Positions 21,608 to 59,477 of a stretch of 64,000 nt of DNA are shown here, piece by piece (position 1 is the stretch's first letter; the number at the start of each line of letters is the position of its first letter). Position numbers and translations under genes: made by a program. Location of the stretch: IMG/VR virus record IMGVR_UViG_3300015261_000002, positions 124,001 to 188,000 of that record; one strand, 5' to 3'. The notes under the pieces are model-generated. The model was not told where the DNA came from. It did no database searches and saw nothing but the letters and a program-made list of their open reading frames with translations.

Positions 21608-21656
21608 GCTAACCCTCCTAGCCTTTGCGGGCTAGGAGGGTTAGCCTTATGGCTGC
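21608..21656. terminator. Bidirectional terminator
   Basis: 16-bp perfect stem GCTAACCCTCCTAGCC / GGCTAGGAGGGTTAGC. Followed by TTATGGCTGC on the plus strand and by a U-rich run on the minus strand. Confidence 0.85.
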
Positions 21657-22277
21657 TTACTGCTGATCAGCAGCTTGTTCTGGTGCTGGTTCTTCAGCAA
21701 CTTCTTTCGCAGGAGTAACCGACGCACGCAGACGATCGGTCATTGCAACGACTGCCAGCAGAAGGCTTTCACCACGACCGGCGCTCAGGAGCTCTTCCAG
21801 TTGCTCGAAGGTGCTGACGGCATTGAAGCCAGCGGCGAGTTCTTCGTCGGTAGGACCGGCAGCCGGCACTTCCACTTCAACGCGCTTTTCAACGGGTTCG
21901 ATGGTCGAAGCCACGGCGGTCAGTACGCGGGACTTCATTTCACCCAGGGCGTCGGCCAGTTCGTTGCCAGCAGCCAGAGGTGCAGCTTCGGTCAGCAGGT
22001 CGGCGAAGTGGTTGGTCAGGGTGTCCAGGTCAGTGACCGTGGAAACGTTGTTCATGGCCGCTTCAGGGGTCATGCGTGCCGCTTCAGGTGCGGCTTCCAC
22101 CACAGGCTTGCCGGTGGCTGCGATCAGACGCTCTTTGATCAGGGAGACCAGACCGTCGCCGCTCGGGCAAGGGTCGTTCGCGTAACGCTGAGGGCGTGGA
22201 TAAACCTGCGTGAGGCGATGGTCGGCCAGCAGGTTCGCTACGTCGCCATTGGTGAGATGTGGGTAAGTACTAGACAT
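21657..22277 (-). CDS. Hypothetical protein, probably abundant; N-terminal module shared with 22381..22971
   Basis: 206 aa, Ala/Glu-rich, strong codon bias like the capsid gene; internal repeat NNVSTVTDLDTL / NAVSTFEQLEEL. Confidence 0.75.
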   Translation of the reverse strand: MSSTYPHLTNGDVANLLADHRLTQVYPRPQRYANDPCPSGDGLVSLIKERLIAATGKPVVEAAPEAARMTPEAAMNNVSTVTDLDTLTNHFADLLTEAAPLAAGNELADALGEMKSRVLTAVASTIEPVEKRVEVEVPAAGPTDEELAAGFNAVSTFEQLEELLSAGRGESLLLAVVAMTDRLRASVTPAKEVAEEPAPEQAADQQ

Positions 22278-22327
22278 CGTTTCTCTCTCTTTTGGTTACG
22301 GATGGGTTTCTACAAAGGATGTTAACA

Positions 22328-22374
22328 GGACAAAAAAATAAAAAGATGTTACCTGTGCCGTGTTACCGGCACAG
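22328..22374 (-). terminator. Intrinsic terminator in the accessory cassette
   Basis: CUGUGCCG stem, then a long U-tract ending UUUUUUGUCC. Confidence 0.75.
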
Positions 22375-22380
22375 TGTCTA

Positions 22381-22971
22381 CTAAATAACTTCGTGCAGTT
22401 CACTTCTTCTTGCCAGAAAGCAAAAGAAAGGTGTGAGACTTCGAGCCGTTCGTTCTTTGTTGATTTCCGCAAGGACCTGATTATCTTCTTTGGGGAAAAC
22501 GACACAGCAGTCACTAGGCAGCAGTGACGTTCTCGCAAGAGTATCGATACTGGTCGTCAGGAAGGTAGAGAACAGGTGTGACGCATCGTCACGGGAAGGC
22601 CAGGAACTAGGAAGGTTGCCATCCACTACCAATTTGTCATACAACGCTTCAAATGTATTGCGCATTTGATCAGGTGTGGTTGTAAACATCTTGTCGGGGA
22701 ATGGCATGATTTGTGGTAACGAGAACGACAACAGATCCGGATTGGGGTTACGTCGCTCTTTCGCGTCATCCCAACTCAAGTTAGGTCCCGACTTCTTCAG
22801 GCGACGCTGGATCTCGTAGACAAGTTCCAGACCGGTCGGTATTTCAATCCCCTCGAACTCCTTAGGAGGATTCTCGAAGTTGATCACACGATAACCGCCT
22901 AGCAAGATTGCCAGGTCTTCGTCGGTCAGGTGTTTGTAGCATTTCGGCGGTACGTCAGTAATGTCGGTCAT
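22381..22971 (-). CDS. Hypothetical protein; N-terminal module shared with 21657..22277
   Basis: 196 aa, SD GGAG; YKHLTDEDLAILL...PTGLELVYEIQRRL. Confidence 0.7.
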   Translation of the reverse strand: MTDITDVPPKCYKHLTDEDLAILLGGYRVINFENPPKEFEGIEIPTGLELVYEIQRRLKKSGPNLSWDDAKERRNPNPDLLSFSLPQIMPFPDKMFTTTPDQMRNTFEALYDKLVVDGNLPSSWPSRDDASHLFSTFLTTSIDTLARTSLLPSDCCVVFPKEDNQVLAEINKERTARSLTPFFCFLARRSELHEVI

Positions 22972-22980
22972 GCTATTCTC

Positions 22981-23343
22981 CTAATGAAGAGTAGGTGATT
23001 GAGGTGGGTTGTTGGCCGAGAAAATATAGACAGGGTCTGCGAGCAGGCTGTCGATCGGTTTAAGCAGGATTACCCAGTCTTTGAAGGGCTGATGTCTGTA
23101 GAAGCTTGCAAAGCTCCTGGGCAGCGTCTCAGGCGCTCCTACATAGAGAAACGCGTGGTAGTGAAGTAAAGTGTTAGCAAAGTCGTCTTCACTTACTACA
23201 ATGCGCAGTTCAGTGATAATATCCTTCGACTCACGGATACCTTCAGGCCAACCATCAACTACAATTGTCCCGGTAATGTAATCCAGGATTTGTTCAATGA
23301 TCTCCATCCCCATGAGTTTGGGATGGTGCAGTTTAAGCAACAT
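22981..23343 (-). CDS. Hypothetical protein
   Basis: 120 aa, SD GAGGA, in the accessory cassette. Confidence 0.6.
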   Translation of the reverse strand: MLLKLHHPKLMGMEIIEQILDYITGTIVVDGWPEGIRESKDIITELRIVVSEDDFANTLLHYHAFLYVGAPETLPRSFASFYRHQPFKDWVILLKPIDSLLADPVYIFSANNPPQSPTLH

Positions 23344-23360
23344 GTTAGATTCCTCGTAGG

Positions 23361-23397
23361 GGACAAAAAATAAAGGGAAGTGTAACCTCCCCTTTAT
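23361..23397 (-). terminator. Intrinsic terminator in the accessory cassette
   Basis: AUAAAGGGGAG-loop-CUUCCCUUUAU followed by UUUUUGUCC. Confidence 0.8.
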
Positions 23398-23404
23398 TCA
23401 CCGC

Positions 23405-23668
23405 TTAGGCCGCCTTGGCCATAAACAGGTTCAGCAAGTTGCCGTTGAACACCATGTGATCTTTCAGTGTTTTAGGGAACTGCTGAACTTCCATTTTTAC
23501 CAGTGGCTCGTAGAGGCGGGTGTCCAGGATTACCTGGTCGCCGCCTTCAACTGCACTGCTGTTACGCAGGCTTTCCAGTTTGTTGCGGAAACGGATCAAT
23601 TCCACTTCAGACTTAGGAAAGTCGCTGGTGGAGAAATCCATCAGCATGTCAAAGATTTTAGCGACCAT
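23405..23668 (-). CDS. Hypothetical protein
   Basis: 87 aa, SD AAGGAG. Confidence 0.65.
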   Translation of the reverse strand: MVAKIFDMLMDFSTSDFPKSEVELIRFRNKLESLRNSSAVEGGDQVILDTRLYEPLVKMEVQQFPKTLKDHMVFNGNLLNLFMAKAA

Positions 23669-23701
23669 GGTTAAACTCCTTTTAGAGGAGCCTAGGTGAG
23701 A

Positions 23702-24034
23702 TTACTTAGGCTCGTTTACGAAACAGTCAACGATCGAGCACACTGTGCCCGCTACTGCAACACCGAACAGGCCGGACATAGTCCCGCTGATGATCTTGCC
23801 GGTGTTGTTGATTTCTGCGGTACCCCAGAGAGTACCTACTGCATAACCAGCGACGCCGCCAGCAATGCCACCCAGGATCCCGCTGGCCAGGGGGCTGCCT
23901 TGAGCAACCGATGCTGCTGCACCCACCAGGGCACCGGCAACACCAGCGATTTGACCAACCTTGATACCTTCGTCACGCTGGCCACGGAAGGAGCGCATAA
24001 TGGATTCACGTTCTGCTTGGTTCATCGAGGACAT
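23702..24034 (-). CDS. Glycine-zipper membrane protein
   Basis: Start ATG 24034 (SD GGGAG), 110 aa. Repeated GxxxG/AxxxG hydrophobic segments (VGQIAGVAGALVGAAA, GILGGIAGGVAGYAVG, GTMSGLFGVAVAG). Confidence 0.7.
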   Translation of the reverse strand: MSSMNQAERESIMRSFRGQRDEGIKVGQIAGVAGALVGAAASVAQGSPLASGILGGIAGGVAGYAVGTLWGTAEINNTGKIISGTMSGLFGVAVAGTVCSIVDCFVNEPK

Positions 24035-24089
24035 AGTTGTAACTCCCATTGGGTTAAGATGTGAAAGACTTATTGTCTTAATCACCCAA

Positions 24090-24097
24090 GTAATATA
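24090..24097 (-). promoter_or_regulatory. phiKZ-type early (virion RNAP) promoter motif TATATTAC
   Basis: Exact TATATTAC on the minus strand, about 55 nt upstream of ATG 24034, in an AT-rich gap after a terminator; equals the published phiKZ early consensus. Confidence 0.65.
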
Positions 24098-24142
24098 GAC
24101 GTGAAACTAACTGTATCTTAAAAAAACAAAATGCGTAATAGA

Positions 24143-24174
24143 GGTAACCTACCGGGGCGACCCGGTAGGTTACT
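24143..24174 (-). terminator. Hairpin ending the nvRNAP operon
   Basis: Stem GTAACCTACCGGG / CCCGGTAGGTTAC, just after the 24190 stop. Confidence 0.75.
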
Positions 24175-24189
24175 TGCTCTAGTCTTGGA

Positions 24190-26517: not shown

Positions 26518-26540
26518 TACACACTCCTAACACCCCCTGA

Positions 26541-28202: not shown

Positions 28203-28212
28203 GGATGCTCCG

Positions 28213-29349: not shown

Positions 29350-29447
29350 GGTGGGAACCTCTATCGACTTCCTTAAAAGCCTATTTGTAATACGTAGTCT
29401 GCTCTAATAATGTAGGTTTAAAAAATTATAACAAGAATACAAAATCC

Positions 29448-29496
29448 AAAAAAAAGACATAACCCCCTCCCCCACCCGAAGGCAGAGGAGGAGGGT
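29448..29496 (-). terminator. Major capsid gene terminator
   Basis: Long GC-rich stem with a UUCG loop, followed by UAUGUCUUUUUUU. Confidence 0.9.
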
Positions 29497-29516
29497 ATGT
29501 TCTATTCCCTTTACAG

Positions 29517-29588
29517 GGGTTACCGCAGCCTTACAACACCACGGAGCCTACTCAGGAGAAAGTACTCCGTAGTAGGCTGCCGCAACCC
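29517..29588 (-). other. Long nested stem-loop in the capsid mRNA 3' UTR
   Basis: GGGUUGC/GUAACCC, GCAGCCU/AGGCUGC, ACUACGGAG/CUCCGUGGU and UACUU/GAGUA stack into about 28 bp, starting right after the TAA-TAA double stop. Confidence 0.65.
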
Positions 29589-29591
29589 TTA

Positions 29592-31784: not shown

Positions 31785-31845
31785 GACTCGAATCCTTTAC
31801 TGAGGATGATTGCAAATATATATTTGTCTGTGTATTAGCGCTACA

Positions 31846-31855
31846 CATAAAATAC
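31846..31855 (-). promoter_or_regulatory. Candidate late (nvRNAP) promoter GTATTTTATG
   Basis: Contains the phiKZ late core TATG, about 60 nt upstream of the capsid ATG. Identical 10-mer at 61323-61332; ATTTTATG at 57547-57554. Confidence 0.55.
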
Positions 31856-31862
31856 AGTGAAG

Positions 31863-32411: not shown

Positions 32412-32417
32412 TTTCAG

Positions 32418-32427
32418 CTCCTAGGAG
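32418..32427. promoter_or_regulatory. Palindromic Shine-Dalgarno shared by two divergent genes
   Basis: CTCCTAGGAG gives AGGAG on both strands, 7 nt from ATG 32435 (+) and 6 nt from ATG 32411 (-). Confidence 0.7.
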
Positions 32428-32434
32428 TTTCCTA

Positions 32435-33982
32435 ATGAACGATTTATTGGTACTGGTTAAGTTGTTGTCCGCGTTGTATCAGGCTAAAAAGCTGAAGGAC
32501 ACCAACCTAATCACGGAACTGGTAGATACGTTAAACGATTTGCCTGTCCCCAACTCCGACGTCTTTACTCAAGACAAGGGTATCCGAGATAGCATTCGCG
32601 CAACTATCCGCTGGCTGTTGGAACAGCCCGAAGAAGATGTACTGGTCATAAAATCATCGTTGTTGCAACGTGTCAGCATGTTTGTCAAGAACGATGAAAG
32701 CTTGAAGGAAGCAATTACCCACGGTCTGGAAGACTATCCGTCTGATGAACAGACGCGAAAGGTTATCTACCAGCACATTTCTGAGATCCGTCTGAACTCG
32801 GAAGGTGAAGAGTTCTCCAAGAAGTTCAAGAAGGCCATCAAGGACTTTTACTTCAAAGACATCAACGACATGGGTAAAGACGATTGGGCTAACCTAATCG
32901 ACTTGGTACAGGCCGGTGTTAACCAAGGTCTGGAAGAACGGCAATCTGAAATTGTTGCACAGGTGACGTCTGAGACGCCTGACTCGTTTAATGCCATCAT
33001 TGACATGGCCAAACGCGAGAACAGTCTCGAAGGCATCATGAAGTCAGGTATCCAAGGTTTGAACCAATCCTTGAATCCTGATGGTGGTTTCCGCCGTGGC
33101 AAGATGTACATGATTGAAGCATTGACTAACCGGGGTAAGTCTCTCGCTACAAGTCACATGGTGGCTAGTATTGGTCTGTACAACAAACCGATGCTGCGGG
33201 ATAAGGCCAAGATCCCTACGATCCTCCTGGAGTCTGCTGAAGACACCATGGACCTGATCATCATGCGCATGTACAAGCTGGCGCTCTCAGCCCGTCACGG
33301 CATTGCTGCTGACTTCCAATCTGCTGAGAACATGGACATCGTTGATGCCATCGTTAGCTGCTTTAAAGAAAACGGTTGGTATCTCATCATCAACCAAATT
33401 GATTCCAGTAAAGACTCGGCTAACACCATGTTTGCCCGCTGCCGTCAACTGGAACTTAAAGGTCACGAAATTATCTTCTGGGCCTACGACTACTGCGGTC
33501 TGCAAAACATCGACAAGATCCCTGGTGAAACAAAGTCCGACAAACTGCAACTGCATTTCCGGAAGATCAGGGGTTTCATCATTGCTCGCGGTATCTGCTT
33601 CCTGACACCTCATCAACTCTCGCCAGCGGCGAAGATGAAGCTCCAGGAGTCGGACGAAGAATCCGAGGTGTACTTTGCTCGTGAAGTTTCCGGTAAGTCG
33701 CTTACTGAAACCTCGACAAAGATCACCAACGAAGTGGATGTGGTAATTACCATCCATGTGGCCAAAACATCCTTCAAGGTTTACTTCACTTGGTGTGTGG
33801 GTAAACAACGGGGCGAAGGGTGCTTGCCAGAAGAACGGTTCGGGATCTATGATTTGCATCCAGAGAAAGGTCTTGAACACGACATCAACAAGAAACCAGC
33901 ATTCCGACGCAGCTTGACTCAACGACTAAACGCCAACGGCGATCTCGAAAATGATTTTGATTCGTTTGAAGTAGCAGCATAA
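32435..33982 (+). CDS. dnaB: DnaB-like replicative helicase (phiKZ gp118-like)
   Basis: 515 aa. GGFRRGKMYMIEALTNRGKS (Walker A), LLESAED, FWAYDY (Walker B) and PHQLS motifs; no intein. Confidence 0.92.
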   Translation: MNDLLVLVKLLSALYQAKKLKDTNLITELVDTLNDLPVPNSDVFTQDKGIRDSIRATIRWLLEQPEEDVLVIKSSLLQRVSMFVKNDESLKEAITHGLEDYPSDEQTRKVIYQHISEIRLNSEGEEFSKKFKKAIKDFYFKDINDMGKDDWANLIDLVQAGVNQGLEERQSEIVAQVTSETPDSFNAIIDMAKRENSLEGIMKSGIQGLNQSLNPDGGFRRGKMYMIEALTNRGKSLATSHMVASIGLYNKPMLRDKAKIPTILLESAEDTMDLIIMRMYKLALSARHGIAADFQSAENMDIVDAIVSCFKENGWYLIINQIDSSKDSANTMFARCRQLELKGHEIIFWAYDYCGLQNIDKIPGETKSDKLQLHFRKIRGFIIARGICFLTPHQLSPAAKMKLQESDEESEVYFAREVSGKSLTETSTKITNEVDVVITIHVAKTSFKVYFTWCVGKQRGEGCLPEERFGIYDLHPEKGLEHDINKKPAFRRSLTQRLNANGDLENDFDSFEVAA

Positions 33983-33998
33983 AGAACTAGAATGGAGC

Positions 33999-34048
33999 TT
34001 AATACCCTATCCGCTCATAGGAGCGGATAGGGTATTAATTATAGCCGC
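33999..34048. terminator. Bidirectional terminator
   Basis: 18-bp perfect stem TTAATACCCTATCCGCTC / GAGCGGATAGGGTATTAA followed by TTATAGCCGC. Confidence 0.85.
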
Positions 34049-34057
34049 TACAACGAT

Positions 34058-41952: not shown

Positions 41953-43008
41953 TTACCCTTTGACGTCGATGCTGCTCGACACAATGCTGGACGCGGTGTT
42001 GTAGACCTTGAACACGAGAGTCTCCAAGAGCTTGATACCCGCCATGCCATTGCGAATGATCTCTTCCAGGCTGTGGGCAATCGCTTTAGCAGCGGCCTGA
42101 TCTTCAGCCTCGGCTTTCTTCGAGAACGCCAGACTGGTATTGAGGCCCTTGATAAAGACCTTTTCCAGCTCTACCGATTTCGTGATCATGCCCTGGAACT
42201 TGGTGTTCATTGTGTCCAGGCTTTTGGCAACCGAACGGGTGGTGGTTTCGCTGCTAATAAAGCCAGCGTTCTTGTCGGATTCCAGCAGATCAGGATCGGC
42301 CTTCAGCGACAGCTTACCGTGCGATGTGATCGACACAGTTGTACCGCCGATATAAGGAGCAGGGTCCTTACCAAAGATCTTGATCAGCGCATCGTGGTGC
42401 TCTTTAAAGAGCTTTTCCATGGCGTCCTTGGTATGGCTCAGCTGCTTGCCAGTAAACAGGGCTTCAGCCTTACGAGCGGTATCACCCACTTCCTTGATGT
42501 ACTCTTCGACCTTACCGGTTGCAGCAGTCCAGTCTGCAATGGCTTTGGTCATCCAATCCAGGTTAGCCGGGATCTTGGCCTTGCTGGCCCACAGGTTCAT
42601 GTAACCCTGGGGATAATGCGTGAAGTGTTTCCTGACCCCGTTCTTATCCAGCTTAGCGATCAGGTCTTTGTTCTTGCGTGCAGCCACTTCTTTCTTGCCG
42701 GTGAAGAAACTGAACACCCACTTGAAGAAGTTCTTTACAGCGGTGATAAGCGAAGACACCATATCACCAATCCAGCTCATGAACCCTTCGGTGCCTTCAA
42801 CACTGTCGAGGTTCTTTTGGCGGGGGATATGGGAAAAGACGTACTGGTAATAGAGACACTCATTACCGGAGACTTTGTCGTATTCGTCAGACAAGTCATC
42901 GATCTTGTCGTCTGGAGCATCCACAACGCTTTCAGGATTCTCGGCGTTGTAGAGTGCTTCAACTGTTGGGGTATTGATAAAACGTCGAGCAAGCACTGGT
43001 TGCGTCAT
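41953..43008 (-). CDS. Head/ejection protein, processed paralog family
   Basis: Start ATG 43008 (MTQPVL), 351 aa; SVEGTE|GFMSWIGDMVSSLITAVKNFFKWVFSFF. Confidence 0.7.
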   Translation of the reverse strand: MTQPVLARRFINTPTVEALYNAENPESVVDAPDDKIDDLSDEYDKVSGNECLYYQYVFSHIPRQKNLDSVEGTEGFMSWIGDMVSSLITAVKNFFKWVFSFFTGKKEVAARKNKDLIAKLDKNGVRKHFTHYPQGYMNLWASKAKIPANLDWMTKAIADWTAATGKVEEYIKEVGDTARKAEALFTGKQLSHTKDAMEKLFKEHHDALIKIFGKDPAPYIGGTTVSITSHGKLSLKADPDLLESDKNAGFISSETTTRSVAKSLDTMNTKFQGMITKSVELEKVFIKGLNTSLAFSKKAEAEDQAAAKAIAHSLEEIIRNGMAGIKLLETLVFKVYNTASSIVSSSIDVKG

Positions 43009-43072
43009 GGTAAAAGTACCTGTTAAAAAGGATATGTAGCAAAACCTATAGCATTCCTCAAAAAACCATATA

Positions 43073-43114
43073 GCAGCCATAAGACTACTAAGGGGGATTG
43101 CTCCCCCTTAGTAG
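43073..43114 (-). terminator. Hairpin terminator
   Basis: 13-bp stem CUACUAAGGGGGA-GCAA-UCCCCCUUAGUAG followed by UCUUAUGGCUGC. Confidence 0.85.
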
Positions 43115-43149: not shown

Positions 43150-44418
43150 TTAGAAGCCGATGTGAGCAGCAACGCAGTCCAGCGTAGCGCCAGCGGCGTT
43201 GACGGCCACTTTGGTCACGTTGGTGGCCATGCTCGAAGTCGAGCTGTAAACAGCCTTGACCAGGTTGACCTGACCGTTGACTTCAGCCGACTTGTCGGCG
43301 TCGCCAGCTTTGATCGAGTTCAGGGAACCGATCACGCGATCACGCTCAGCAGCGCTGAAAGCCTTGGCCACTTTGGTGTTGCGCAGGAACGCGCCGACGC
43401 CACGGACTTCGGAGATCGCTTTCAGCAGGCCAGCCTTGTCGGTTTTGGCCTTGACTTCGCCGGTGGTCAGCTTCTTGGCTTCCGGATCCTTCATCACAAC
43501 CATTTTCAGGGAGCGAGCAGCGGCAGCGGCTTCGGCCATGGTTTTGATTTCGGCATCGCTGTACGAAACCTGGATGCGGATACCGTTCATCACGCCGATC
43601 AGGACGTCATGGGAACCAGCCTTCTTCTCGTTGTACTTGCCGGCCGCCTTGGCGTCGGTTTTGACAGCGGAGATCAGACCGGTGTAAGCCGACTTGAAGT
43701 CTTCCAGGCTGATGCCGGAAACGTTTTTGCCCAGCTCGGTCAGCTTGGCGATCGCGCCTTGGGTGGCTTCGAAGCCTGCGGATTTCACAGTGCCCAGGCC
43801 GCCTTTGGCGTAGTCGACGTAGATGTTCCAGCCGCCCAGCTTGACCATCTCTTTCAGCTTGGCGCCGTCTTCCAGGCGCTTCTTCAGGGTGTCGCAACGG
43901 CGCTCGAGGCCGGCGGCCTTGTCGAAGATCGACACGAAGAAACCGATGACGGTGTTGAAGATGTGCTTGATGAACTCGACGGCTTTCTTGCCGTACTCCT
44001 TGATGGAGTCCATGATGCTTTCCATGCCCTCGCGAGCATGCATCTGAGCGGTCGACGCGTCGGTGATGGATTCAGCACCCATGCGCTCGCCCTGGATGTT
44101 GGCACCCAGTTTGTTGCCGAGTTTCACGCCACGGTTGTAGAGGTGGGCGAAAGCCAGGCCGCTGAAGTTGCCGGAGTTGATCAGGGATTCCATGCCTTCG
44201 ACGACTTCGGTCGCTTCTTCGACGGCTTCTTCCAGATCGTCCATCTTGTCGACCAGCGCTTCAACTTGCTGCGACTGCTCTTCGATGGCCACGGTGACTT
44301 CGGCGATTTCGGTTTTCACCGCTTCTTCGACGGCTTCAACGACTGCTTCACCACCGGCGCCTTGCAGCTCCAGTTCTTCAGCGCCAGTGTACATGTTCAG
44401 AAGATCAATACCGGACAT
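43150..44418 (-). CDS. Abundant head/inner-body protein (phiKZ gp93 / SPN3US gp53-54 family-like)
   Basis: 422 aa, capsid-like codon bias. Glu-rich propeptide with several G-x-E sites ending EGME|SIMDSIKEYGKKAVEFIKHIF. Confidence 0.8.
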   Translation of the reverse strand: MSGIDLLNMYTGAEELELQGAGGEAVVEAVEEAVKTEIAEVTVAIEEQSQQVEALVDKMDDLEEAVEEATEVVEGMESLINSGNFSGLAFAHLYNRGVKLGNKLGANIQGERMGAESITDASTAQMHAREGMESIMDSIKEYGKKAVEFIKHIFNTVIGFFVSIFDKAAGLERRCDTLKKRLEDGAKLKEMVKLGGWNIYVDYAKGGLGTVKSAGFEATQGAIAKLTELGKNVSGISLEDFKSAYTGLISAVKTDAKAAGKYNEKKAGSHDVLIGVMNGIRIQVSYSDAEIKTMAEAAAAARSLKMVVMKDPEAKKLTTGEVKAKTDKAGLLKAISEVRGVGAFLRNTKVAKAFSAAERDRVIGSLNSIKAGDADKSAEVNGQVNLVKAVYSSTSSMATNVTKVAVNAAGATLDCVAAHIGF

Positions 44419-49287: not shown

Positions 49288-49320
49288 TTTTAATTACCTT
49301 CATTAATGGGAGCCAGAGAA

Positions 49321-50397: not shown

Positions 50398-53328
50398 ATG
50401 GCCGACATTACACAACGAGAACTGATCGCACTGGCCAACAACCCTATTCGTGGGGTCAACCGTGTGATCAACCAGATCGAAGAGAACTACTTCGGTCGAT
50501 CGGTAAAACTGAACAGCAAGAGCCACCCGTTTGTCTTTGGTACCGACATCATCCTCGGAACCGCCCACGGTATCTTGAACCGTGTTGACGATGCGGTGGC
50601 TAAACTGTTCCCCGCTCATGCACGCAGTACTGCTGATCTCAGCCGGCACATGTCGGAAGAAGAGCAGGTCGGGATGTTTGGTACCCCGGCGATCATGGAC
50701 CTGCAATACGCGATCAACACCGACGTCTACATGTCGTTGGCAAAAGACGTAACGATCACCCTCGGCAAAAGTACCTTCACGTACAAAATGCTGTTGCTGC
50801 CGAAGGACACCGAACTGACCTTTGGTGGTTACACCTTTGCGATCGAGAACGGTATTGAAATCCGTTACAGCGAGCAGACGGGCTACCAGGTCGTCTACGA
50901 TGACAGCACGAACAATCCGCTGAACCCGATCTCGAACAACCTCCTGAAGCGAGTGGTGACCCCTAACGGTTACCTGACGATCGTTATCCCGTGCCGTCAG
51001 TTGATGTGCCAGCCTACCGAGAATCTGACGTCGAACATCAGCTCGGGTTGTGCCGGTGATATCGACTTCATTGACTATCTGTTTGCCGTTCGTGCATTCC
51101 AGACGGTCAATGGCATCAAGACGGAAATCCCGGTTACCTACAACCAGGATGTCTTCGACCCTAACACGGTCACCATGGCATTGAGCCTGGATGTCAGCAA
51201 CCAGCGGTTCAATTACCGTATCCCGGATGTCTACATTGCCAACGGCCTGGGCATCGGTTCGATCGACATCTATACCTACACGACGAAGGGTGAACTGTCG
51301 AAAGACTTTACCCAGACTGCGTTGCCGGATGTTGGGGTTAACTACCAGGACTATCGTTTTGGTGCAGGTACCCTCGGTCCGTTCTCTAACGCACTGAAGT
51401 CGTCAGGCGGTATGGCATGGCGGGCAATGACGCCGACGTCGGGTGGTAGCAATGCCATTCCTTTTGCTCAGATGAAGGCTTCCTTTATCATGGGTCGTCG
51501 TCAGCGCAATCTGCCGATCACCGAAAACAACCTGGTGGGTACCGTGGAGAACTACGGCTACAACTCGGTTAAGGCGATCGACTACATGACGAAGCGTAGC
51601 TACTCGTTGACCAAGGAACTTCGGATCCAGGACAACAAGAAGCTGTTTGCTCCCATGGGTTGCTTTGTTGGCAGTTACCTGGCATCGGTTAACAGTCTCA
51701 TTGGTAGCGGTGTGGTGATCGACAATGGTCAGCGTATTACCATCCCGCACAACGTGCTGTTTGATATCAGCCAGCCAACTACGGTCCTGATCAACCAGGT
51801 CACGAAGAACAACTACGAAGCCAGAAGCAACGAAGCCAAGGTAGACCTGGTAGCGTCGACGACTCTCGTCTATACACCGTTCTACTACGTTATGGACCTG
51901 ACGAACAACCAGGCTGTGTTGCGTACCTACCACCTCGACCAACCTAAGTTCCAAAGCCAGACGTTTAAGGCTGAGAACAGCTTGCTGGGTATCGACGTGG
52001 GTGTGGGCTCTGTGGCCATCGAGCAGAATGACTCGGGTTACCTGATCACGATTGTGACGGCATCGGGTAAGAGCTATAAGGAACTGGACGACTCCACGTT
52101 GGGCCTCCAGCTCTCTGTACAGCCTGAAGACACAAACAGCCTGGCCAGTATTGCAGCCACCCTGTACGGCCTCACAGAAGACGGTGAACGTATCTGGCAG
52201 TTCGCACTCGACAGTCGTTTCGATGTTGATGTGAATGACGTGATGTACTTCACAAACTTCGTGCAGTTCGGTAACACCCAACCGACCACCGGCGTTCCAC
52301 TGGATCTGACGATGACGTTTATCTTCACCTTCCAAGGCGATAAGGCTAACACAGCGACCGACTCGGATGACAAGATTGACCAAAGTCTGTTCCCAGTGCC
52401 GATGGTGGCTATCATCGAAACTCAGTACAGTGTTGTGTTGGGCAAGAAGATGGGTAACCTGTACAGCCGTATCCGTCCTCTCGTAGGCGAAGCGCAGTAC
52501 AAGAAGTATGGCGTCGACGTTCCGCTTGTGTATCAGGAAACGATCTACAAGCGTGACGAGAATAAAGAGATCATCTTTATCGATGGTGTTGCTCAAGTTG
52601 AGCACGAAGTGGGTGAGGTCATGTACGACAAGAACGTACCGCCTCGCATCATGCTGGAATACACCAAAGACGACTACATGCTTGATGGTGAAGGCAACTA
52701 CATCGAAGTGGCTCCTCGTGAGAAACTCTATCACTGGGACTTCATCGGTTTCGACGGTGCGTACTTCTTCAGTCATGATGCCTATGACATGCAGTTTGCC
52801 CAAGAGACCAAGGACTACTTCGTTGATGTCATCAGTCAGGACATGGCTTACTTTGCATCGTCCTCGCTTGATCAGACTAGCCTGGTCTACCAACCGCGCA
52901 ACAAGCTGGGCTACCAGAAGGTGGTCGTCAACAGCAACTACACCTCGTACCTCCGTCAGGATCTGAGCTTTGTGGTCACCTACTACCTCACGTCAGCGGG
53001 TATGAAGAACCAGAGCCTGAAGAGTTCCCTGGAAGCCAGTACTCCACGGACACTCAACGAAGGGTTGTTTGGAGCGACAACCTTCAGTGCCAACGACTTG
53101 GCGTTCCAATTGAAGGACGGTACCTCCCGAGAAGTGGTTGCGGTTAAACTGAGTGCCATCGCAGGTGACAGTACTGTGGATGTCATCAGTAACGCTGACT
53201 CCCTGACGGGCTTCAGTGTTCGTAAACTGTTGCAGGTGAGTTCGGACGGCTTGCTGTCGATCAAGGAAGACATCGACATCGTGTTCTTGCCGCATGACGT
53301 TTCCATGGTCAACATGGGTCCGGTGTAA
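50398..53328 (+). CDS. Large baseplate wedge-like protein (phiKZ gp87-like)
   Basis: 976 aa, beta-rich; size and plus-strand position inside the head-gene block match gp87. Confidence 0.7.
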   Translation: MADITQRELIALANNPIRGVNRVINQIEENYFGRSVKLNSKSHPFVFGTDIILGTAHGILNRVDDAVAKLFPAHARSTADLSRHMSEEEQVGMFGTPAIMDLQYAINTDVYMSLAKDVTITLGKSTFTYKMLLLPKDTELTFGGYTFAIENGIEIRYSEQTGYQVVYDDSTNNPLNPISNNLLKRVVTPNGYLTIVIPCRQLMCQPTENLTSNISSGCAGDIDFIDYLFAVRAFQTVNGIKTEIPVTYNQDVFDPNTVTMALSLDVSNQRFNYRIPDVYIANGLGIGSIDIYTYTTKGELSKDFTQTALPDVGVNYQDYRFGAGTLGPFSNALKSSGGMAWRAMTPTSGGSNAIPFAQMKASFIMGRRQRNLPITENNLVGTVENYGYNSVKAIDYMTKRSYSLTKELRIQDNKKLFAPMGCFVGSYLASVNSLIGSGVVIDNGQRITIPHNVLFDISQPTTVLINQVTKNNYEARSNEAKVDLVASTTLVYTPFYYVMDLTNNQAVLRTYHLDQPKFQSQTFKAENSLLGIDVGVGSVAIEQNDSGYLITIVTASGKSYKELDDSTLGLQLSVQPEDTNSLASIAATLYGLTEDGERIWQFALDSRFDVDVNDVMYFTNFVQFGNTQPTTGVPLDLTMTFIFTFQGDKANTATDSDDKIDQSLFPVPMVAIIETQYSVVLGKKMGNLYSRIRPLVGEAQYKKYGVDVPLVYQETIYKRDENKEIIFIDGVAQVEHEVGEVMYDKNVPPRIMLEYTKDDYMLDGEGNYIEVAPREKLYHWDFIGFDGAYFFSHDAYDMQFAQETKDYFVDVISQDMAYFASSSLDQTSLVYQPRNKLGYQKVVVNSNYTSYLRQDLSFVVTYYLTSAGMKNQSLKSSLEASTPRTLNEGLFGATTFSANDLAFQLKDGTSREVVAVKLSAIAGDSTVDVISNADSLTGFSVRKLLQVSSDGLLSIKEDIDIVFLPHDVSMVNMGPV

Positions 53329-53329
53329 A

Positions 53330-53388
53330 GCAGCTATAAACCATGCCTACCCTACCTCCCGCAAAGGAGGTAGGGTAGGTTATGGCCG
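53330..53388. terminator. Bidirectional terminator
   Basis: 14-bp stem CCTACCCTACCTCC / GGAGGTAGGGTAGG flanked by GCAGCTATAA and TTATGGCCG. Confidence 0.85.
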
Positions 53389-53395
53389 GTACAAC

Positions 53396-54154
53396 TTATT
53401 CCGCAGGCTGTTCCATCGGAGTCCCTGGGTACTTCAGGTTCAGGTATTCCGCAAACATGAACGGCAGCTTCAACTTGTTGCACATGTCGCTCGTGCGCCA
53501 AGAGAAGTCCTTCAGACTGTAACCCGTCAACTTCAGGTCAGGCTTGAAGGTACCTTCCAGATAGCTGGAGTGCGCCTTAGCCATGATGTCCTTGAACTCG
53601 TTAACAAAGAGGTAGTCCCCGTTGATGACGATATCCGGAACACGGTTGAGTTGATCCCACGAGGTGAGCGAACCGTCTTTCAACTTCTGCTCAGCTTCGT
53701 AGAAGTAGTCGCCGGTGTACGCGGTGTATTTCAACACCTCGCAACGGAACTCGTTCAGACGTTCCTGGCTCTCCACCGTGAAGTCAGCTGCGAGCAGCTC
53801 TTTCATTGTGGTGTTGACGACCTGGTCGATGTAGGCGTAAATGACCTCGAAGTACTCGCGGGTTTCTTTCAGCTCGCCCAGTTGCTTGCGTGCTTCTTCA
53901 ACGGGCAGGCCTGCATACAGCACAACAGACTTGTTCGTTTCAGGAAAGCATTCGGACAACTGAACAATCAGCGAGTTAGCCCGAGAGCTACTACCCCAGA
54001 TACCGCGGATGATCTTTGTAGCGACCGGCAGTGGAAGACCTTCGTCTTCCATCGCGGTGATCAGGGATTCGAGTTCGTCGATGTACGTCTGAGTCGTGAC
54101 ATCAGCCACACCCTTCAGTTTGACGATCTCTTCCCACATGGCTGCTCGGCTCAT
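53396..54154 (-). CDS. Head-associated hypothetical protein
   Basis: 252 aa, ATGA-coupled to 54151..55665. Confidence 0.6.
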   Translation of the reverse strand: MSRAAMWEEIVKLKGVADVTTQTYIDELESLITAMEDEGLPLPVATKIIRGIWGSSSRANSLIVQLSECFPETNKSVVLYAGLPVEEARKQLGELKETREYFEVIYAYIDQVVNTTMKELLAADFTVESQERLNEFRCEVLKYTAYTGDYFYEAEQKLKDGSLTSWDQLNRVPDIVINGDYLFVNEFKDIMAKAHSSYLEGTFKPDLKLTGYSLKDFSWRTSDMCNKLKLPFMFAEYLNLKYPGTPMEQPAE

Positions 54155-55665: not shown

Positions 55666-56053
55666 GGCCGGCCTCCAGTTCTTTTACCAGGTAGTCGGTC
55701 AGAACGGAGCAGGCCGGCAGCTCGCCAACGTCCACGTCATTCACGATGGTGGTGAACTCTTTCTTGCACGGCAGGGTGCCGGTGTTCATCATCACACCGT
55801 TCAGCATGCCGATGCGCACTTGAGCGGTCTTGTGGATCAGCGGGGCTGGGATAGGGGATACCTTGTTCCACTTGTCGAGCATGGCCCAGGCTTTCTCATC
55901 CATCTCGGTGGTCCAACCGCCCAGACGGTACGAACGACGGATCAGGGCACGGGCGAACGGTTCGGCCAGCAGCTTGCTCTGCTCGATGGGACAGGTGATA
56001 CCTTTTTCGGTCAGGGCTTTCTTGAATTCAACAACATGGATCAAATGCGACAT
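55658..56053 (-). CDS. Small conserved hypothetical protein
   Basis: 131 aa, overlap-coupled in the operon. Confidence 0.6.
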   Translation of the reverse strand: MSHLIHVVEFKKALTEKGITCPIEQSKLLAEPFARALIRRSYRLGGWTTEMDEKAWAMLDKWNKVSPIPAPLIHKTAQVRIGMLNGVMMNTGTLPCKKEFTTIVNDVDVGELPACSVLTDYLVKELEAGRE

Positions 56054-56080
56054 GGTAGAGTTCCTTGCAAGGGGAGAGGG

Positions 56081-57484
56081 TTAGAATTCGTACGTCTTGT
56101 TTTCTTCTGGACTCTTGTCCGTTCCGTCACGACGCGCTTTCAGGTTGGCCAGTTTTACAGCAATGGTGTTCACCTCGTGGTTGGCGACCACAGAAGTGTA
56201 ATGTTCAACTTCTTGGGCTTTAAAGTCAGACTGACTGAACACCCAACCCATGAAGCGGTGGATCACGGTACTCTCATACCAAGGACGCAGGTCTTTCGCA
56301 TGGTTCAGCAGTTGCTGCACTTCATCTGCCAGGGCATTCTTTTCAGAGGCCGGCATCTTCGTGTCCTCTTTCAGCTTTTGGATCAGCTGACGGACAGCAT
56401 CTTCAAACCGACGGTGGTCAGCGTTATAGACGCCCGAGTAACCTTTGCTGAAGTAGTTCAGAACAAAGATAAACATATAGAAGACCATGGCCATGAACAA
56501 AGCACCGGCGACGCCGATAGAGATCGTTACCGAGAGCCAGGCAGGCAATGCAATGATCGTGGTCACTGCGGCAATCATCAGGCTGTTGACAACCGTTTGG
56601 ATGCAACCCTGGTCAGTCAGGATGCCGATCGCTGCGATAATGCCCTTGTCACAGCCCATGCGGATGGCGTACATGTCAGCCACAACTTCGGACGACATCG
56701 ACTCAACCCCTACCGACAAACTGCGTCGCATATTACGTTGGGCGATTAATTTATCGAAGTAGAGGAAGACAGTCTTGTCATCCTGTTCTTGGGCGAGCAT
56801 TTGCAGCTCACCTTGTTTGGCCGCTGGAACATCCAGCAGAGAAGCAACATCCTTGAGCACTACAACGCGATCTGAGACGTCTTTAGCCTCGCGATAGTAG
56901 AGCAGGGCGCTCTTCAGGTAGAGGTTGTCAGACGCGACTGTGAGCAGCATCATGCAACCGCTGAACACATGACCGAGTTCGTGGGCGATCGCACCTGCCA
57001 GGATACCCGGCAACGGTACGCCAAACTTCTTCACCTTATCGGCTGGGAAGGTAGCGTTCAGGTCAGGGTTGATCTGGAAGGTCACGGGTACGGTTTGGAA
57101 GGAACCGAGGACCTTACCACTGGTGTAATCGATGCCACCTTTAAACACCTTGTCCTTGTTCTGGGTAAACCAGCGGTACAGGGTGGTTTGAGTTGGCTTC
57201 AGCAGGTCGTCTACCAGTGCGTTGTTCAGCACATGGTTGGGGGAGAAGTAACCGGCGTCAACAGACAGGTTTCCGCTCTTGGAGAACTTCATGTCCACGT
57301 TCTTGAAACCCGTGAACTCCTCGATGAGGTCTTTGATGCCTGGGATGGCTTCTTTACTCAGAACACCGTCGGGACCAATCTGACTTTCGAGGTACAGCGA
57401 CAGCTTGCGGTAGAAGTCAGTGGACTGGAAGTTAATGAACTCCAACCCTCCGACGGGTCGTTTCAAAAAATCCATCGAGATCAT
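56081..57484 (-). CDS. Membrane-anchored HExxH zinc metallopeptidase-like protein in the head operon
   Basis: 467 aa. GAIAHELGH plus downstream SEVVADMYA (gluzincin/M48-like E-x-x-A-D), then a hydrophobic stretch of about 50 aa. Confidence 0.65.
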   Translation of the reverse strand: MISMDFLKRPVGGLEFINFQSTDFYRKLSLYLESQIGPDGVLSKEAIPGIKDLIEEFTGFKNVDMKFSKSGNLSVDAGYFSPNHVLNNALVDDLLKPTQTTLYRWFTQNKDKVFKGGIDYTSGKVLGSFQTVPVTFQINPDLNATFPADKVKKFGVPLPGILAGAIAHELGHVFSGCMMLLTVASDNLYLKSALLYYREAKDVSDRVVVLKDVASLLDVPAAKQGELQMLAQEQDDKTVFLYFDKLIAQRNMRRSLSVGVESMSSEVVADMYAIRMGCDKGIIAAIGILTDQGCIQTVVNSLMIAAVTTIIALPAWLSVTISIGVAGALFMAMVFYMFIFVLNYFSKGYSGVYNADHRRFEDAVRQLIQKLKEDTKMPASEKNALADEVQQLLNHAKDLRPWYESTVIHRFMGWVFSQSDFKAQEVEHYTSVVANHEVNTIAVKLANLKARRDGTDKSPEENKTYEF

Positions 57485-57567
57485 GCACCTGTACTCCTCA
57501 AAGATATTTATTACTGGGACGCCATTGGTATAGCGCTAAAAGCGGGCATAAAATGCAGGATAAACCC

Positions 57568-59427
57568 ATGACACAAAATCTTTCACCAATTATCGCGAAA
57601 GTCTGCAAACATGCTCATTATTCAGAGCATCGCTGGGACAAAACCAAAGACCTCCTCACAGCGAAGATCACGAACATCCATGAGGACGGTACTCGGTCGA
57701 CAACCTTTAAGTCCTACGAGAATTACAAGCAGCCGTTCTGGATCATTAAGGAACAGCATCGCAAGTTCAACCAACCAAAGGACTACATCGAAGAACGGTA
57801 CGTCAGGGAATACCGTTGCAATCGTCGTCAGATTCCATTTGAAGTCAAGAAGCAGTTGTTTGGGGCAGCTGATCGCAGTGCTTCGATTTATGACATCAAG
57901 TCGGGCAAAGGTATTCAATACGTGTTTGGTCTTGACCAGACGCCTGCGGTGCATTTGAAGCAACAGTTCTTTAAACGGTATGCGGAATACCAGGAAAAAG
58001 AAAAGTACACCATTGCGGCATTCGACGTTGAAGCCGACATGGAAGCGATTGGTGAAGTGAAACCGATCATGATGGCTTCGGTCACTATGAAGGACAAAGC
58101 TTACTTCGCCGGGTGCCGGGGTTGGTATCAGTCTCGGCAGGACAAGATTGACCCGAAGGTTCGTTTAACTGACTTTGCGATTTTAGCGGAGTTAAAAGCG
58201 GCCGAGAAGAAGTACCTGCAAGAACACTTGGATCGTCGAGGTTGCACGATTGAGTATGAGTTGTTCGATACACCGGGTCAGGTAGCCTTTGCTTGTATTC
58301 AGAAGTTCCACGAGTGGGAACCAGACTGGGTACTGAGCTGGAACGCCGCTTACGATATGGAAGCGTGTGAGCGTGCATTGCGGTCCGAGGGTTATAACCT
58401 GGCCGACGTGTATTGCGATCCTCGTGTTCCAAAAGAGTATCGGATGTATGAACTTAACCTGGGTCGTACACACAAGGTTAAAGAGAACGGCGACCGTACT
58501 CCTCTCGAACCTCAAGAGAAGTTCCCAACCGTTCGTTGTGTAGCAACATGGCAGTGGGCTGATGCCATGTCGGGTTATGCCATCAAGCGATTCTCTTCGG
58601 GTAAGCTCGAGAGTTACTCGCTGGAGGCGACTGCGCAACGGGAGAAGGTCAAGGGTAAGCTGTACACCGAAGAAGGCGCTGATAAGCTCCCAGGGTCTCC
58701 TCAGTGGCATCGATACATGCAGAAGCATTATCCGTATCTGTATTCGATGTACAACATTGGCGATAACTTCCCAATCGAAGAGATCAACGAAACCACGCTG
58801 GACTTTGTACTGTCGATTCCAATGCTGCTGCGTTATTCGGAGTATTTCAACTTCGTTTCGCAACCACGTTTGATTGCAGATACCTTGTCCTTTATTGCGC
58901 GTGAGCATGGTTACGTTTGGGGCAGCACTCCTGCTAAACGGGATAAAGTCTTTACTGACCGACTGCCGACTCTCGACAACTGGATTGCACTTCTCGATAC
59001 TGAGAAGAACGCAGACATGGGTCGGGCAATCTTTATCGGTCTGGATGACGTTATCAGTGCGGGTCGTGGTCTTACTGACGACCTTGACGTTGAAGGGGCG
59101 TACCCAACCGGTACACTGGCTTCTAACGCAGCGAACAAAACCACGCAGATGGAGGTGTATGCCATTCAGGGTGCTAATGACATGAAGTTCCGGGAGATTG
59201 CCGTGAACTATGCCAGCAGTACTCAAGCGAATGCCATGGGTCTGAGTCACGCACTGTTCCGTTTCCCACAAGCCGACAAACTGCAATCTGAGTTTGAGAA
59301 AGGTTTGGAAGAACTGGGTTATGCAGACATGTTGAAGCAACTGCGTGAAAGTGCAGAGAAAGCAAAAGCAGAACGAGAAGCACGTCAAGCCAAAGTCCTA
59401 CCAGAAGTACTGAAAGAAGCGGCGTAA
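57568..59427 (+). CDS. Split family-B DNA polymerase, exonuclease plus motif-A subunit (phiKZ gp82-like)
   Basis: Start ATG 57568 (SD AGGA), 619 aa. ExoI AAFDVEAD, ExoII SWNAAYD, ExoIII MYNIGD and motif-A-like DLDVEGAYPT; no motif B or C. Confidence 0.88.
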   Translation: MTQNLSPIIAKVCKHAHYSEHRWDKTKDLLTAKITNIHEDGTRSTTFKSYENYKQPFWIIKEQHRKFNQPKDYIEERYVREYRCNRRQIPFEVKKQLFGAADRSASIYDIKSGKGIQYVFGLDQTPAVHLKQQFFKRYAEYQEKEKYTIAAFDVEADMEAIGEVKPIMMASVTMKDKAYFAGCRGWYQSRQDKIDPKVRLTDFAILAELKAAEKKYLQEHLDRRGCTIEYELFDTPGQVAFACIQKFHEWEPDWVLSWNAAYDMEACERALRSEGYNLADVYCDPRVPKEYRMYELNLGRTHKVKENGDRTPLEPQEKFPTVRCVATWQWADAMSGYAIKRFSSGKLESYSLEATAQREKVKGKLYTEEGADKLPGSPQWHRYMQKHYPYLYSMYNIGDNFPIEEINETTLDFVLSIPMLLRYSEYFNFVSQPRLIADTLSFIAREHGYVWGSTPAKRDKVFTDRLPTLDNWIALLDTEKNADMGRAIFIGLDDVISAGRGLTDDLDVEGAYPTGTLASNAANKTTQMEVYAIQGANDMKFREIAVNYASSTQANAMGLSHALFRFPQADKLQSEFEKGLEELGYADMLKQLRESAEKAKAEREARQAKVLPEVLKEAA

Positions 59428-59428
59428 A

Positions 59429-59477
59429 GCAGCTATAAACCCTCCTACTCCCTTTGTCGGGGAGTAGGAGGGTTTAT
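59429..59477. terminator. Bidirectional terminator
   Basis: 18-bp stem ATAAACCCTCCTACTCCC / GGGAGTAGGAGGGTTTAT preceded by GCAGCT. Confidence 0.85.

What the first reader, a model, noticed from the sequence alone, without database searches (positions are those of the whole stretch)
21608..59477. Core-gene hairpins end in a conserved UUAU(A/G)GC(U/C)GC tail instead of a U-tract
Read in the direction of the incoming gene, GC-rich hairpins are followed within a few bases by TTATGGCTGC (21647, +), TTATAGCCGC (34039, +), TTATGGCTGC (43082, -), TTATAGCTGC (53339, -), TTATGGCCG (53380, +) and TTATAGCTGC (59438, -, partly inside the stem). Related TTATG tails occur at 29462 and 61327. The 53326 and 59425 sites share 17 identical nt (TAAAGCAGCTATAAACC). 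In contrast, the early cassette uses classical long U-tracts ending UUUUUUGUCC. Inference: two terminator classes for the two phage RNA polymerases, or a protein or RNase recognition site. The embedded TATG could also make some of them terminator-promoter hybrids.
Basis: partly seen in the sequence, partly recalled or inferred. Interest (0 to 1): 0.6.

Follow-up and report, generated by a model that had tools for sequence, protein, structure and literature searches.

The report
Jumbo-phage terminator hairpins with conserved tail
These are most likely the transcription stop signals of a giant phiKZ-like phage: strong hairpins followed by a fixed ten-letter tail (UUAURGCYGC) instead of a run of U, which is a lineage-specific version of a terminator type already described in phage phiKZ.

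Summary
The window is part of a 224.7-kb phage genome related to EL and RisingSun (Chimalliviridae). TTATRGCYGC occurs 12 times in the genome (0.8 expected). All 12 copies sit directly 3' of a 10-18-bp GC-rich hairpin, mostly between convergent genes. Four close relatives carry 8-13 copies each. Across them the tail changes less than the stems (3.4% against 12.3%), and the stems keep their pairing through compensatory changes.

The kind of element is already known. Putzeys et al. (2024) described 61 phiKZ terminators as a stem-loop followed by TTATKYYGT, and 201phi2-1 has a similar motif. Published phiKZ 3' ends fall 3-8 nt after the stem, inside that tail. Published phiKZ start sites do not use the tail's TATG. 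The RGCYGC extension is specific to this lineage: it is absent from phiKZ, EL and RisingSun.

A second tail class (UUUAUUUUUUG) follows genes driven by an early-type promoter motif, so two classes exist. Assigning them to the two phage polymerases is only weakly supported (p about 0.045, with PhuZ as an exception). No transcript data could be obtained for this phage. Verdict: a new member of a known kind, of modest interest.

The parts
21608..21645 (.). Bidirectional terminator hairpin (16-bp stem, 6-nt loop). It lies between the virion structural protein gene 18570-21584 (+) and the early-cassette gene 21657-22277 (-).
   Evidence: dG -38.7, z -7.6. One search shows compensatory changes among relatives. 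One search gives phrog_3004.
21647..21656 (+). Tail TTATGGCTGC for + strand transcripts. The stop codon of the opposing gene starts at the next base (21657).
   Evidence: The tail is identical in G001, G002 and G004 and degraded in G003.
21585..21607 (-). U-rich tail on the - strand (TATGG, then a U-rich stretch containing a U6 run). It serves the early-cassette transcripts arriving from the right.
   Evidence: U6 run; early-type promoter upstream.
33999..34038 (.). Terminator hairpin (18-bp stem, 4-nt loop) after the DnaB-like helicase gene 32435-33982 (+).
   Evidence: dG -31.8, z -6.7.
34039..34048 (+). Tail TTATAGCCGC.
   Evidence: TATAGCCGC is conserved in all four relatives.
43085..43114 (-). 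Terminator hairpin (13-bp stem) after the internal head protein gene 43150-44418 (-). The setting is co-directional, because the next gene, 41953-43008, is also on the - strand.
   Evidence: dG -32.8.
43058..43082 (-). Tail TTATGGCTGC (43082-43073) followed by a short spacer and a T6 run. This site shows that the tail lies downstream of the hairpin in the direction of transcription.
   Evidence: Relatives keep TTATGGCYGC plus a T-run.
53346..53379 (.). Bidirectional terminator hairpin (14-bp stem) between the 976-aa phrog_3248 gene 50398-53328 (+) and gene 53396-54139 (-).
   Evidence: Stems are replaced with compensation in L003 and L004.
53380..53389 (+). Tail TTATGGCCGG, a variant ending in G. 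In relatives only the core TATRGCCG is kept.
53330..53339 (-). Tail TTATAGCTGC for - strand transcripts, 6 nt after the stem. The stop codon of the + gene lies 1 nt beyond it.
59435..59477 (.). Terminator hairpin (18 pairs, including an AU-rich base) between the DNA polymerase gene 57568-59427 (+) and gene 59513-60592 (-, phrog_21850).
   Evidence: dG -34.2, z -7.2.
59429..59438 (-). Tail TTATAGCTGC, whose first bases are part of the stem.
   Evidence: It stays invariant in relatives while the adjacent stem pair changes with compensation.
29448..29495 (-). Related terminator: a hairpin followed by TTATG and a U8 run (the phiKZ-like form). An early-type promoter motif lies just downstream.
   Evidence: dG -30.6.
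22328..22374 (-). Early-cassette terminator of the other class: a short hairpin followed by a U5-A-U7-G tract ending GUCC.
23344..23404 (-). A second early-cassette terminator of the U-rich class (tail UUUAUUUUUUGUCC).

Best explanation
The hairpins are the phage's own intrinsic-type transcription terminators. The ten bases that follow them are the sequence-specific 3' part of the signal. They are the counterpart, in this EL/RisingSun-related lineage, of the stem-loop + TTATKYYGT terminator motif mapped in phiKZ.

Inferred mechanism. A phage multisubunit RNA polymerase transcribes the C-rich arm, the loop and the G-rich arm. The hairpin forms while the last RNA bases are the weakly pairing UUAU. 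The RNA is released a few bases after the stem, within UUAU-R-G-C-Y.

Because the stems are perfect palindromes, one hairpin serves both directions between convergent genes. Each direction then has its own tail, either UUAURGCYGC or a U-rich tail. The GCYG part is probably a polymerase-read element (a pause or release signal), but that step is speculative.
For: Shown in this genome and its relatives:
- The 10-mer occurs 12 times against 0.79 expected, and every copy is hairpin-adjacent. Relatives carry 8-13 copies, against 0-1 for the reversed control pattern.
- The tail changes at 3.4% of compared positions, against 12.3% in the 40 nt of hairpin beside it (p=4e-9). The variation is concentrated at R, Y and the edge positions.
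- The stems covary: 6 of 23 and 2 of 21 pairs show double changes.
- 9 of the roughly 17 real convergent junctions carry the tail. At co-directional sites it lies downstream of the hairpin.
- In 6 of 10 convergent cases the opposing stop codon lies within 1 nt of the tail's last base, and it never lies further inside the tail. This delimits a 10-nt unit.

Known from the phiKZ family:
- Stem-loop + TTAT is the published phiKZ terminator motif, found at 61 terminators. Motif A of 201phi2-1 resembles it.
- I placed 13 published phiKZ 3' ends on the phiKZ genome. They fall 3-8 nt after the stem, at TTAT^ or TTATGY^.
- TTAT is enriched at stem ends in all the genomes examined: 22/76 here, 101/170 in phiKZ, 33/88 in RisingSun and 34/124 in EL, against 3-11% at random positions.
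Against:
- A UUAU tail would not count as a canonical U-tract, so termination efficiency is unknown.
- At convergent junctions, sequence alone cannot say which strand uses the motif. Its complement always lies between a stop codon and the hairpin.
- In predicted folds, part of the tail pairs with upstream bases such as CCAUA. It could therefore be a stem extension rather than a single-stranded tail.
- The phiKZ 3' ends could be trimmed processing products.
- The gene calls are my own heuristic.
Confidence: 0.75

Rival explanations
1. Polymerase-specific terminator classes. UUAURGCYGC would stop the non-virion polymerase on middle and late core genes. UUUAUUUUUUG would stop the virion polymerase on early cassettes. 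This is the reader's main inference, and it refines the best explanation rather than replacing it.
For: - The GCYGC tail ends 1 of 17 units with the early-type promoter motif, against 12 of 38 others (p=0.045). U-runs end 14 of 17 early units against 14 of 38 others (p=0.003).
- Genes ending in the GCYGC tail are conserved core genes: terminase, virion proteins, helicase, ribonuclease and internal head protein.
- Genes ending in U-rich tails are often small and have no PHROG match.
Against: - PhuZ has an early-type promoter and the GCYGC tail.
- At co-directional sites the GCYGC tail is itself followed by a T-run, so the two classes blend.
- Promoter classes are inferred from motifs only.
- The statistical association is modest, and the units are not independent.
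Confidence: 0.2
2. An RNA processing or stability site. An endonuclease (host RNase E-like or the phage ribonuclease) would cut in the AU-rich UUAU next to the stem, and the hairpin would then protect the new 3' end. The motif would be a nuclease or protein recognition site rather than a polymerase signal.
For: - The sequence-specific 10-nt unit is conserved more strongly than a mere weak RNA-DNA hybrid would require.
- The genome encodes a conserved ribonuclease, phrog_3265.
- The phiKZ 3' ends next to stems cannot distinguish termination from trimming.
Against: - The phiKZ elements were classed as intrinsic terminators.
- Eight 201phi2-1 terminators worked in a terminator-trap reporter outside infection.
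- The placement at convergent junctions is what collision-avoiding terminators need.
Confidence: 0.12
3. Terminator-promoter hybrid. The embedded TATG would act as a phiKZ-type late promoter, with transcription starting at the G.
For: - The phiKZ late promoters are TATG with +1 at G.
- At co-directional site 43082 the motif lies 74 nt upstream of the next start codon.
- One phiKZ start site (P049) lies 9 nt after a terminator stem, at a second TATG.
Against: - R is A in 30 of 62 copies, and all four TATG positions are required in phiKZ.
- 10 of the 12 exact 10-mer copies point into the 3' end of an opposing gene.
- None of 17 phiKZ hairpin-adjacent TTATG tails is a published start site among P008-P066.
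- A better late-promoter candidate, ATTTTATG, stands upstream of the major head gene.
Confidence: 0.05
4. The functional strand is the other one. GCRGCYATAA, lying between a stop codon and the hairpin, would act on the incoming transcript or at the DNA level, for example as a translation-termination context or a protein binding site.
For: - At convergent sites the complement of the motif follows a stop codon within 0-3 nt in most cases.
- One co-directional site (genome 23415) has a one-mismatch copy upstream of the hairpin.
Against: - Four to five co-directional sites per genome, conserved in relatives, place the motif downstream of the hairpin where no gene exists on the other strand.
- Wobble pairs in the predicted stem extensions at two of these sites fit only the transcribed strand (my reading of the sequences).
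- There is no consistent reading-frame relation to the stop codon.
Confidence: 0.04

Closest known systems
phiKZ conserved intrinsic terminators: stem-loop + TTAT (consensus BCCYCCCCHWWDGGGRRGGBYTTATKYYGT; Putzeys et al. 2024, PMC10914365)
   Same: - A GC-rich palindromic stem with a C-rich 5' arm.
- TTAT at the stem end, followed by G-C-Y-G-like bases.
- Frequent bidirectional use between convergent genes, with the opposing stop codon abutting the tail.
- Coexistence with TTAT + U-run forms.
   Different: - The tail here is TTAT-R-GCYG-C-T. It has one extra base before GCYG, and R is A or G rather than K.
- The exact 10-mer is absent from phiKZ, EL and RisingSun.
- Stems are longer, 13-18 bp against about 9-10 bp.
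- The tail positions are far more sharply defined.
- No 3'-end mapping exists for this phage.
201phi2-1 terminator motifs A-E (PMC11512511)
   Same: It is also a jumbo phage with two multisubunit polymerases. It has several terminator motif classes, and its motif A resembles the phiKZ motif.
   Different: Its logos were not available to me as text, so I could make no base-by-base comparison. It belongs to a different genus and has a different host.
Canonical bacterial Rho-independent terminator
   Same: A stable GC-rich hairpin at gene ends, bidirectional arrangement between convergent genes, and a weak A/U stretch starting at the stem end.
   Different: Only four A/U bases (UUAU) follow the stem, and then a GC-rich GCYGC. 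There is no 7-9-nt U-tract. The polymerases expected to read the signal are the phage's non-canonical ones.
phiKZ late promoter TATG (PMC4666361)
   Same: It shares the letters TATG in half of the copies.
   Different: In the other half the G is replaced by A. The orientation at convergent junctions is wrong for a promoter, and there is no phiKZ precedent for starts at the tail.

Membership tests
phiKZ-type TTAT terminators (Chimalliviridae) | Stable GC-rich stem-loop with a C/Y-rich 5' arm and a G/R-rich 3' arm | tested here: met
   Stems of 10-18 bp with dG of -31 to -39 kcal/mol. Covariation is seen among relatives.
phiKZ-type TTAT terminators (Chimalliviridae) | TTAT at or immediately after the 3' end of the stem | tested here: met
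   The TAT start lies between -4 and +4 of the first unpaired base in 60 of 62 copies. TTAT is enriched about 10-fold at stem ends.
phiKZ-type TTAT terminators (Chimalliviridae) | Downstream bases K-Y-Y-G-T | tested here: inconclusive
   The tail here is R-G-C-Y-G-C. It shares GCYG if one base is inserted. It is similar to the phiKZ consensus but not identical.
phiKZ-type TTAT terminators (Chimalliviridae) | Placed at gene or operon ends, including bidirectional use at convergent junctions | tested here: met
phiKZ-type TTAT terminators (Chimalliviridae) | Transcript 3' ends map at the element | not testable with these tools
Only the published phiKZ 3' ends could be mapped.
phiKZ-type TTAT terminators (Chimalliviridae) | Host genome is a chimallivirus with its own multisubunit RNA polymerases | tested here: met
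   The closest relatives are RisingSun, Joad and EL. The genome encodes PhuZ tubulin and an RNA polymerase beta-like subunit and a phrog_2943 polymerase.
Canonical Rho-independent terminator | U-tract of about 7-9 nt directly after the stem | tested here: not met
   The tail is UUAU followed by GCYGC. A T-run is absent at convergent sites and lies 12-17 nt away at co-directional sites.
phiKZ-type late promoter | Invariant TATG upstream of a late gene, with the start at the G | tested here: not met
   The sequence is TATA in 30 of 62 copies. Most copies face the 3' end of an opposing gene.

The most novel reading that the evidence does not exclude
The RGCYGC extension may be a signal read by only one of the phage's two polymerases, or by a lineage-specific termination factor. 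Middle and late transcripts made inside the phage nucleus would then stop at hairpin + UUAURGCYGC. Early transcripts made by the virion polymerase would stop at hairpin + UUUAUUUUUUG. That would amount to temporal-class-specific terminators.
Probability: 0.2. Interest if true: 0.6.

Novelty: new member of a known kind. Interest (0 to 1): 0.3.

Why it matters
How the non-canonical, sigma-less polymerases of nucleus-forming jumbo phages terminate is not understood. This lineage offers an unusually sharp version of the family's terminator. It has a 10-11-nt tail that is nearly invariant across five genomes while the stems drift, and abutting stop codons delimit the element exactly. That makes a clean template set for mutagenesis and in vitro termination assays. 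It also supplies a ready annotation rule for transcription units in related metagenomic phages. It does not reveal a new kind of element.

Tried and rejected
- A megablast of 10 kb of the window against the phage collection found nothing. Relatives were found only at the protein level and in IMG/VR.
- Rfam found no family in the window.
- The exact 10-mer is absent from phiKZ, EL and RisingSun.
- Supplements of the journal versions of the two transcriptome papers are not held. I used the bioRxiv supplement instead and read only part of it: 3' ends T001-T033 and start sites P008-P066.
- The ATG inside TTATGG at 43080 is not a start codon. There is no ribosome-binding site because the hairpin lies directly upstream, and coding statistics favour a start at 43008.
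- The motif is not a tandem in-frame stop, because its frame relative to the stop codon is inconsistent.
- It is not a mobile palindromic repeat family, because the stems differ between sites while the tail is constant.
- A match of the tail's YG to the elemental pause rule (G at -10, Y at -1, G at +1) is suggestive only. G is the commonest base at the -10 position but reaches just 47%. I treat this as speculation.


Full report
**Context**

The window is bases 124001-188000 of a single-contig virus record of 224,747 bp with 51.6% G+C. A 1004-aa virion protein has its best matches, at about 55% identity, in the Erwinia phages RisingSun and Joad and the Pseudomonas phage EL. The genome encodes PhuZ tubulin, a major head protein of the phiKZ type, an RNA polymerase beta-like subunit and many PHROG families typical of jumbo phages. 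It is therefore a chimallivirus of a lineage not represented among named phages. IMG/VR holds at least seven close relatives with 87-90% protein identity. I fetched four of them whole, as G001-G004. The gene calls are my own codon-bias heuristic: 229 genes covering 93.5% of the genome.

**Checking the observation**

- TTATRGCYGC matches at exactly the five reported places in the window. That is 5 against 0.21 expected, and no shuffle reached 5. The variant at 53380 and the 17-nt identity between 53326 and 59425 are also correct.
- Genome-wide there are 12 copies against 0.79 expected under a first-order model. All 12 directly follow a GC-rich inverted repeat.
- The looser 8-mer TATRGCYG occurs 28 times in the genome. 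I estimate this is about the number expected from uniform base use. Twelve of those copies start within -6 to +8 nt of the end of one of 38 strong hairpins. The association with hairpins, not the word itself, is therefore the signal.
- The hairpins are very stable, with dG of -31 to -39 kcal/mol and z-scores of -5 to -7.6.
- Rfam has no family in the window.

**Conservation**

Each of the four relatives carries 8-13 copies of the 10-mer, against 0-1 for the reversed control pattern. I aligned 14 sites from this genome to their orthologues without requiring the motif.

- The tail positions other than R and Y differ in 3.4% of comparisons. The 40 nt of hairpin beside them differ in 12.3% (Fisher p=4e-9).
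- Changes in the tail are concentrated at R (A/G), at Y (C/T) and at the two edge positions.
- The stems keep their pairing through double changes: 6 of 23 pairs at one site and 2 of 21 at another.
- Loops often appear as their reverse complement in a relative.
- Pooling all hairpin-adjacent copies in the five genomes (62 copies) gives the consensus (T)TATRGCYGC-T-W.

**Orientation**

Ten of the 12 copies of the 10-mer lie between convergent genes. There the complement of the tail lies between the stop codon of the opposing gene and the hairpin, so strand assignment is ambiguous. Co-directional sites settle it. At window 43082, and at genome positions 85309, 203847 and 219569, only one strand carries genes and the motif lies downstream of the hairpin. 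At these sites the tail is followed, after about four bases, by a run of 5-7 T.

At convergent sites the opposing stop codon lies within 1 nt of the last base of the 10-mer in 6 of 10 cases. The furthest it reaches into the tail is 1 nt. This footprints the element as a unit of about ten bases.

**What is already known**

Putzeys et al. (2024) mapped 133 termination sites in phiKZ by ONT-cappable-seq. They reported that 61 of them share a stem-loop followed by TTAT, with consensus tail TTATKYYGT. A study of 201phi2-1 found five terminator motifs, the main one resembling that of phiKZ, and validated eight terminators in a reporter assay.

I fetched phiKZ, EL and RisingSun whole and applied the same hairpin scan.

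- TTAT lies within -4 to +12 of the stem end in 101 of 170 hairpin directions in phiKZ (11% at random positions), 33 of 88 in RisingSun, 34 of 124 in EL and 22 of 76 here (2.9% at random positions).
- Typical phiKZ tails read TTATGCYGT, with the opposing stop codon abutting them, exactly as here.
- Read against phiKZ, the tail here has one extra base before GCYG.
- The exact 10-mer is absent from phiKZ, EL and RisingSun, and the tail positions here are much more sharply defined.

**Functional evidence by proxy**

I placed the published phiKZ 3' ends T001-T033 on the phiKZ genome. For the 13 that lie at hairpin + TTAT elements, the 3' end falls 3-8 nt after the stem, right after TTAT or after TTATGY. 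This is the place a U-tract would occupy in a canonical terminator.

I then placed the published phiKZ start sites P008-P066. In the interval they cover there are 17 hairpin-adjacent TTATG tails, and none is a start site. The nearest start (P049) uses a second TATG 9 nt after the stem. Together with R being A in half the copies here, and with the phiKZ requirement for all four bases of TATG, this argues against terminator-promoter hybrids.

**The second tail class and the two-polymerase idea**

The listing of intergenic regions shows a second tail, YTTTATTTTTTG, often followed by TCC. It also shows an early-type promoter motif, (Y)CTAYATYAY preceded by A/T-rich sequence, in 19 intergenic copies, 18 of them on the - strand. 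This motif resembles the phiKZ early promoter sequences listed.

I walked upstream from each terminator direction to the first recognisable signal.

- Units with the early-type motif end in a T-run in 14 of 17 cases and in the GCYGC tail in 1 of 17.
- Other units end in a T-run in 14 of 38 cases and in the GCYGC tail in 12 of 38.
- The Fisher p-values are 0.003 for T-runs and 0.045 for the GCYGC tail.

Genes that end in the GCYGC tail are conserved core genes: terminase large subunit, two virion proteins, helicase, ribonuclease, internal head protein and the 976-aa phrog_3248 protein. The exception is PhuZ, which has an early-type promoter motif and a GCYGC tail followed by a T-run.

Two classes are therefore real, and they correlate with promoter type. 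Assigning them to the two polymerases remains an inference.

**Mechanism**

- Shown: a stable, covarying hairpin; a sequence-constrained 10-nt element on its 3' side; placement at the ends of transcription units.
- Known from relatives: 3' ends map inside the homologous tail.
- Inferred: the hairpin forms while UUAU is in the RNA-DNA hybrid, and release occurs within the next few bases.
- Speculative: the YG of GCYG, 8-9 nt after the stem, may act as a pause or release signal.

In predicted folds, the first bases of the tail can pair with bases upstream of the stem. This mirrors the A-tract/U-tract pairing of canonical bidirectional terminators. At two co-directional sites this pairing relies on wobble pairs that exist only in the transcribed strand; this is my own reading of the sequences.

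**Limits**

The promoter classes are motif-based. I read only part of the phiKZ supplementary tables.

**Verdict**

The element belongs to a terminator type already published for phiKZ-like phages, with a lineage-specific and sharper tail. The two-polymerase hypothesis is possible but weakly supported. The hybrid-promoter idea is not supported.

Noticed in passing
window 24035-24189 (genome 148099); also window 29416 and 16 other intergenic sites genome-wide: There is an early-type promoter motif, (Y)CTAYATYAY preceded by an A/T-rich stretch. It has 19 intergenic copies, 18 of them on the - strand. Four copies also share TTTAAGATACA about 25 nt upstream and a common GTGATTAA stretch about 5 nt downstream (longer in three of them), so they form a repeated promoter-leader cassette.
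   Followed up: partly
window 31846-31853 (-), 57547-57554 (-), 61323-61330 (-); genome 66788 (+) and 1716 (+): ATTTTATG stands 43-103 nt upstream of start codons, including that of the major head protein gene. It is a candidate late promoter of the phiKZ TATG type.
   Followed up: partly
window 53346-53379 compared with L002/L008 and L003/L004; genome sites 14642 and 145608 compared with relatives: Terminator loops appear as their reverse complement in relatives (CGCAAA against TTTGCG). In L003 the terminator at the 53346 site is identical over about 47 nt to the terminator that G001 carries at the 59435 site. This suggests inversion and copy-exchange of terminator cassettes through the shared flanks.
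   Followed up: partly
window 43009-43072 (-): The 5' leader between the 43085 terminator and the start of gene 41953-43008 is more conserved among relatives than the neighbouring coding sequence. It contains GCTATAGGTTTTGCTACATATCC. TATAGGT/TAGGTTT words are enriched in intergenic DNA, but they are largely the complement of the early-type promoter motif.
   Followed up: no
window 41953-43008 (-) and 59513-60592 (-): Two paralogous genes (phrog_21850) lie next to GCYGC-tailed terminators: 59513-60592 ends in one, and 41953-43008 starts just downstream of one.
   Followed up: no
window 12701-13114: This is a 414-nt stretch in which my gene caller found no gene. It ends in a hairpin (13066-13099) followed on the - strand by CTATTACGCATT. 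That tail variant is also seen at window 24142 and at genome position 23415.
   Followed up: no
genome 2551-5808 (-), outside the window (L056): The terminase large subunit ORF is 1085 aa, but terminase profiles match only roughly its first 390 residues. It may carry an insertion or a fused domain.
   Followed up: no
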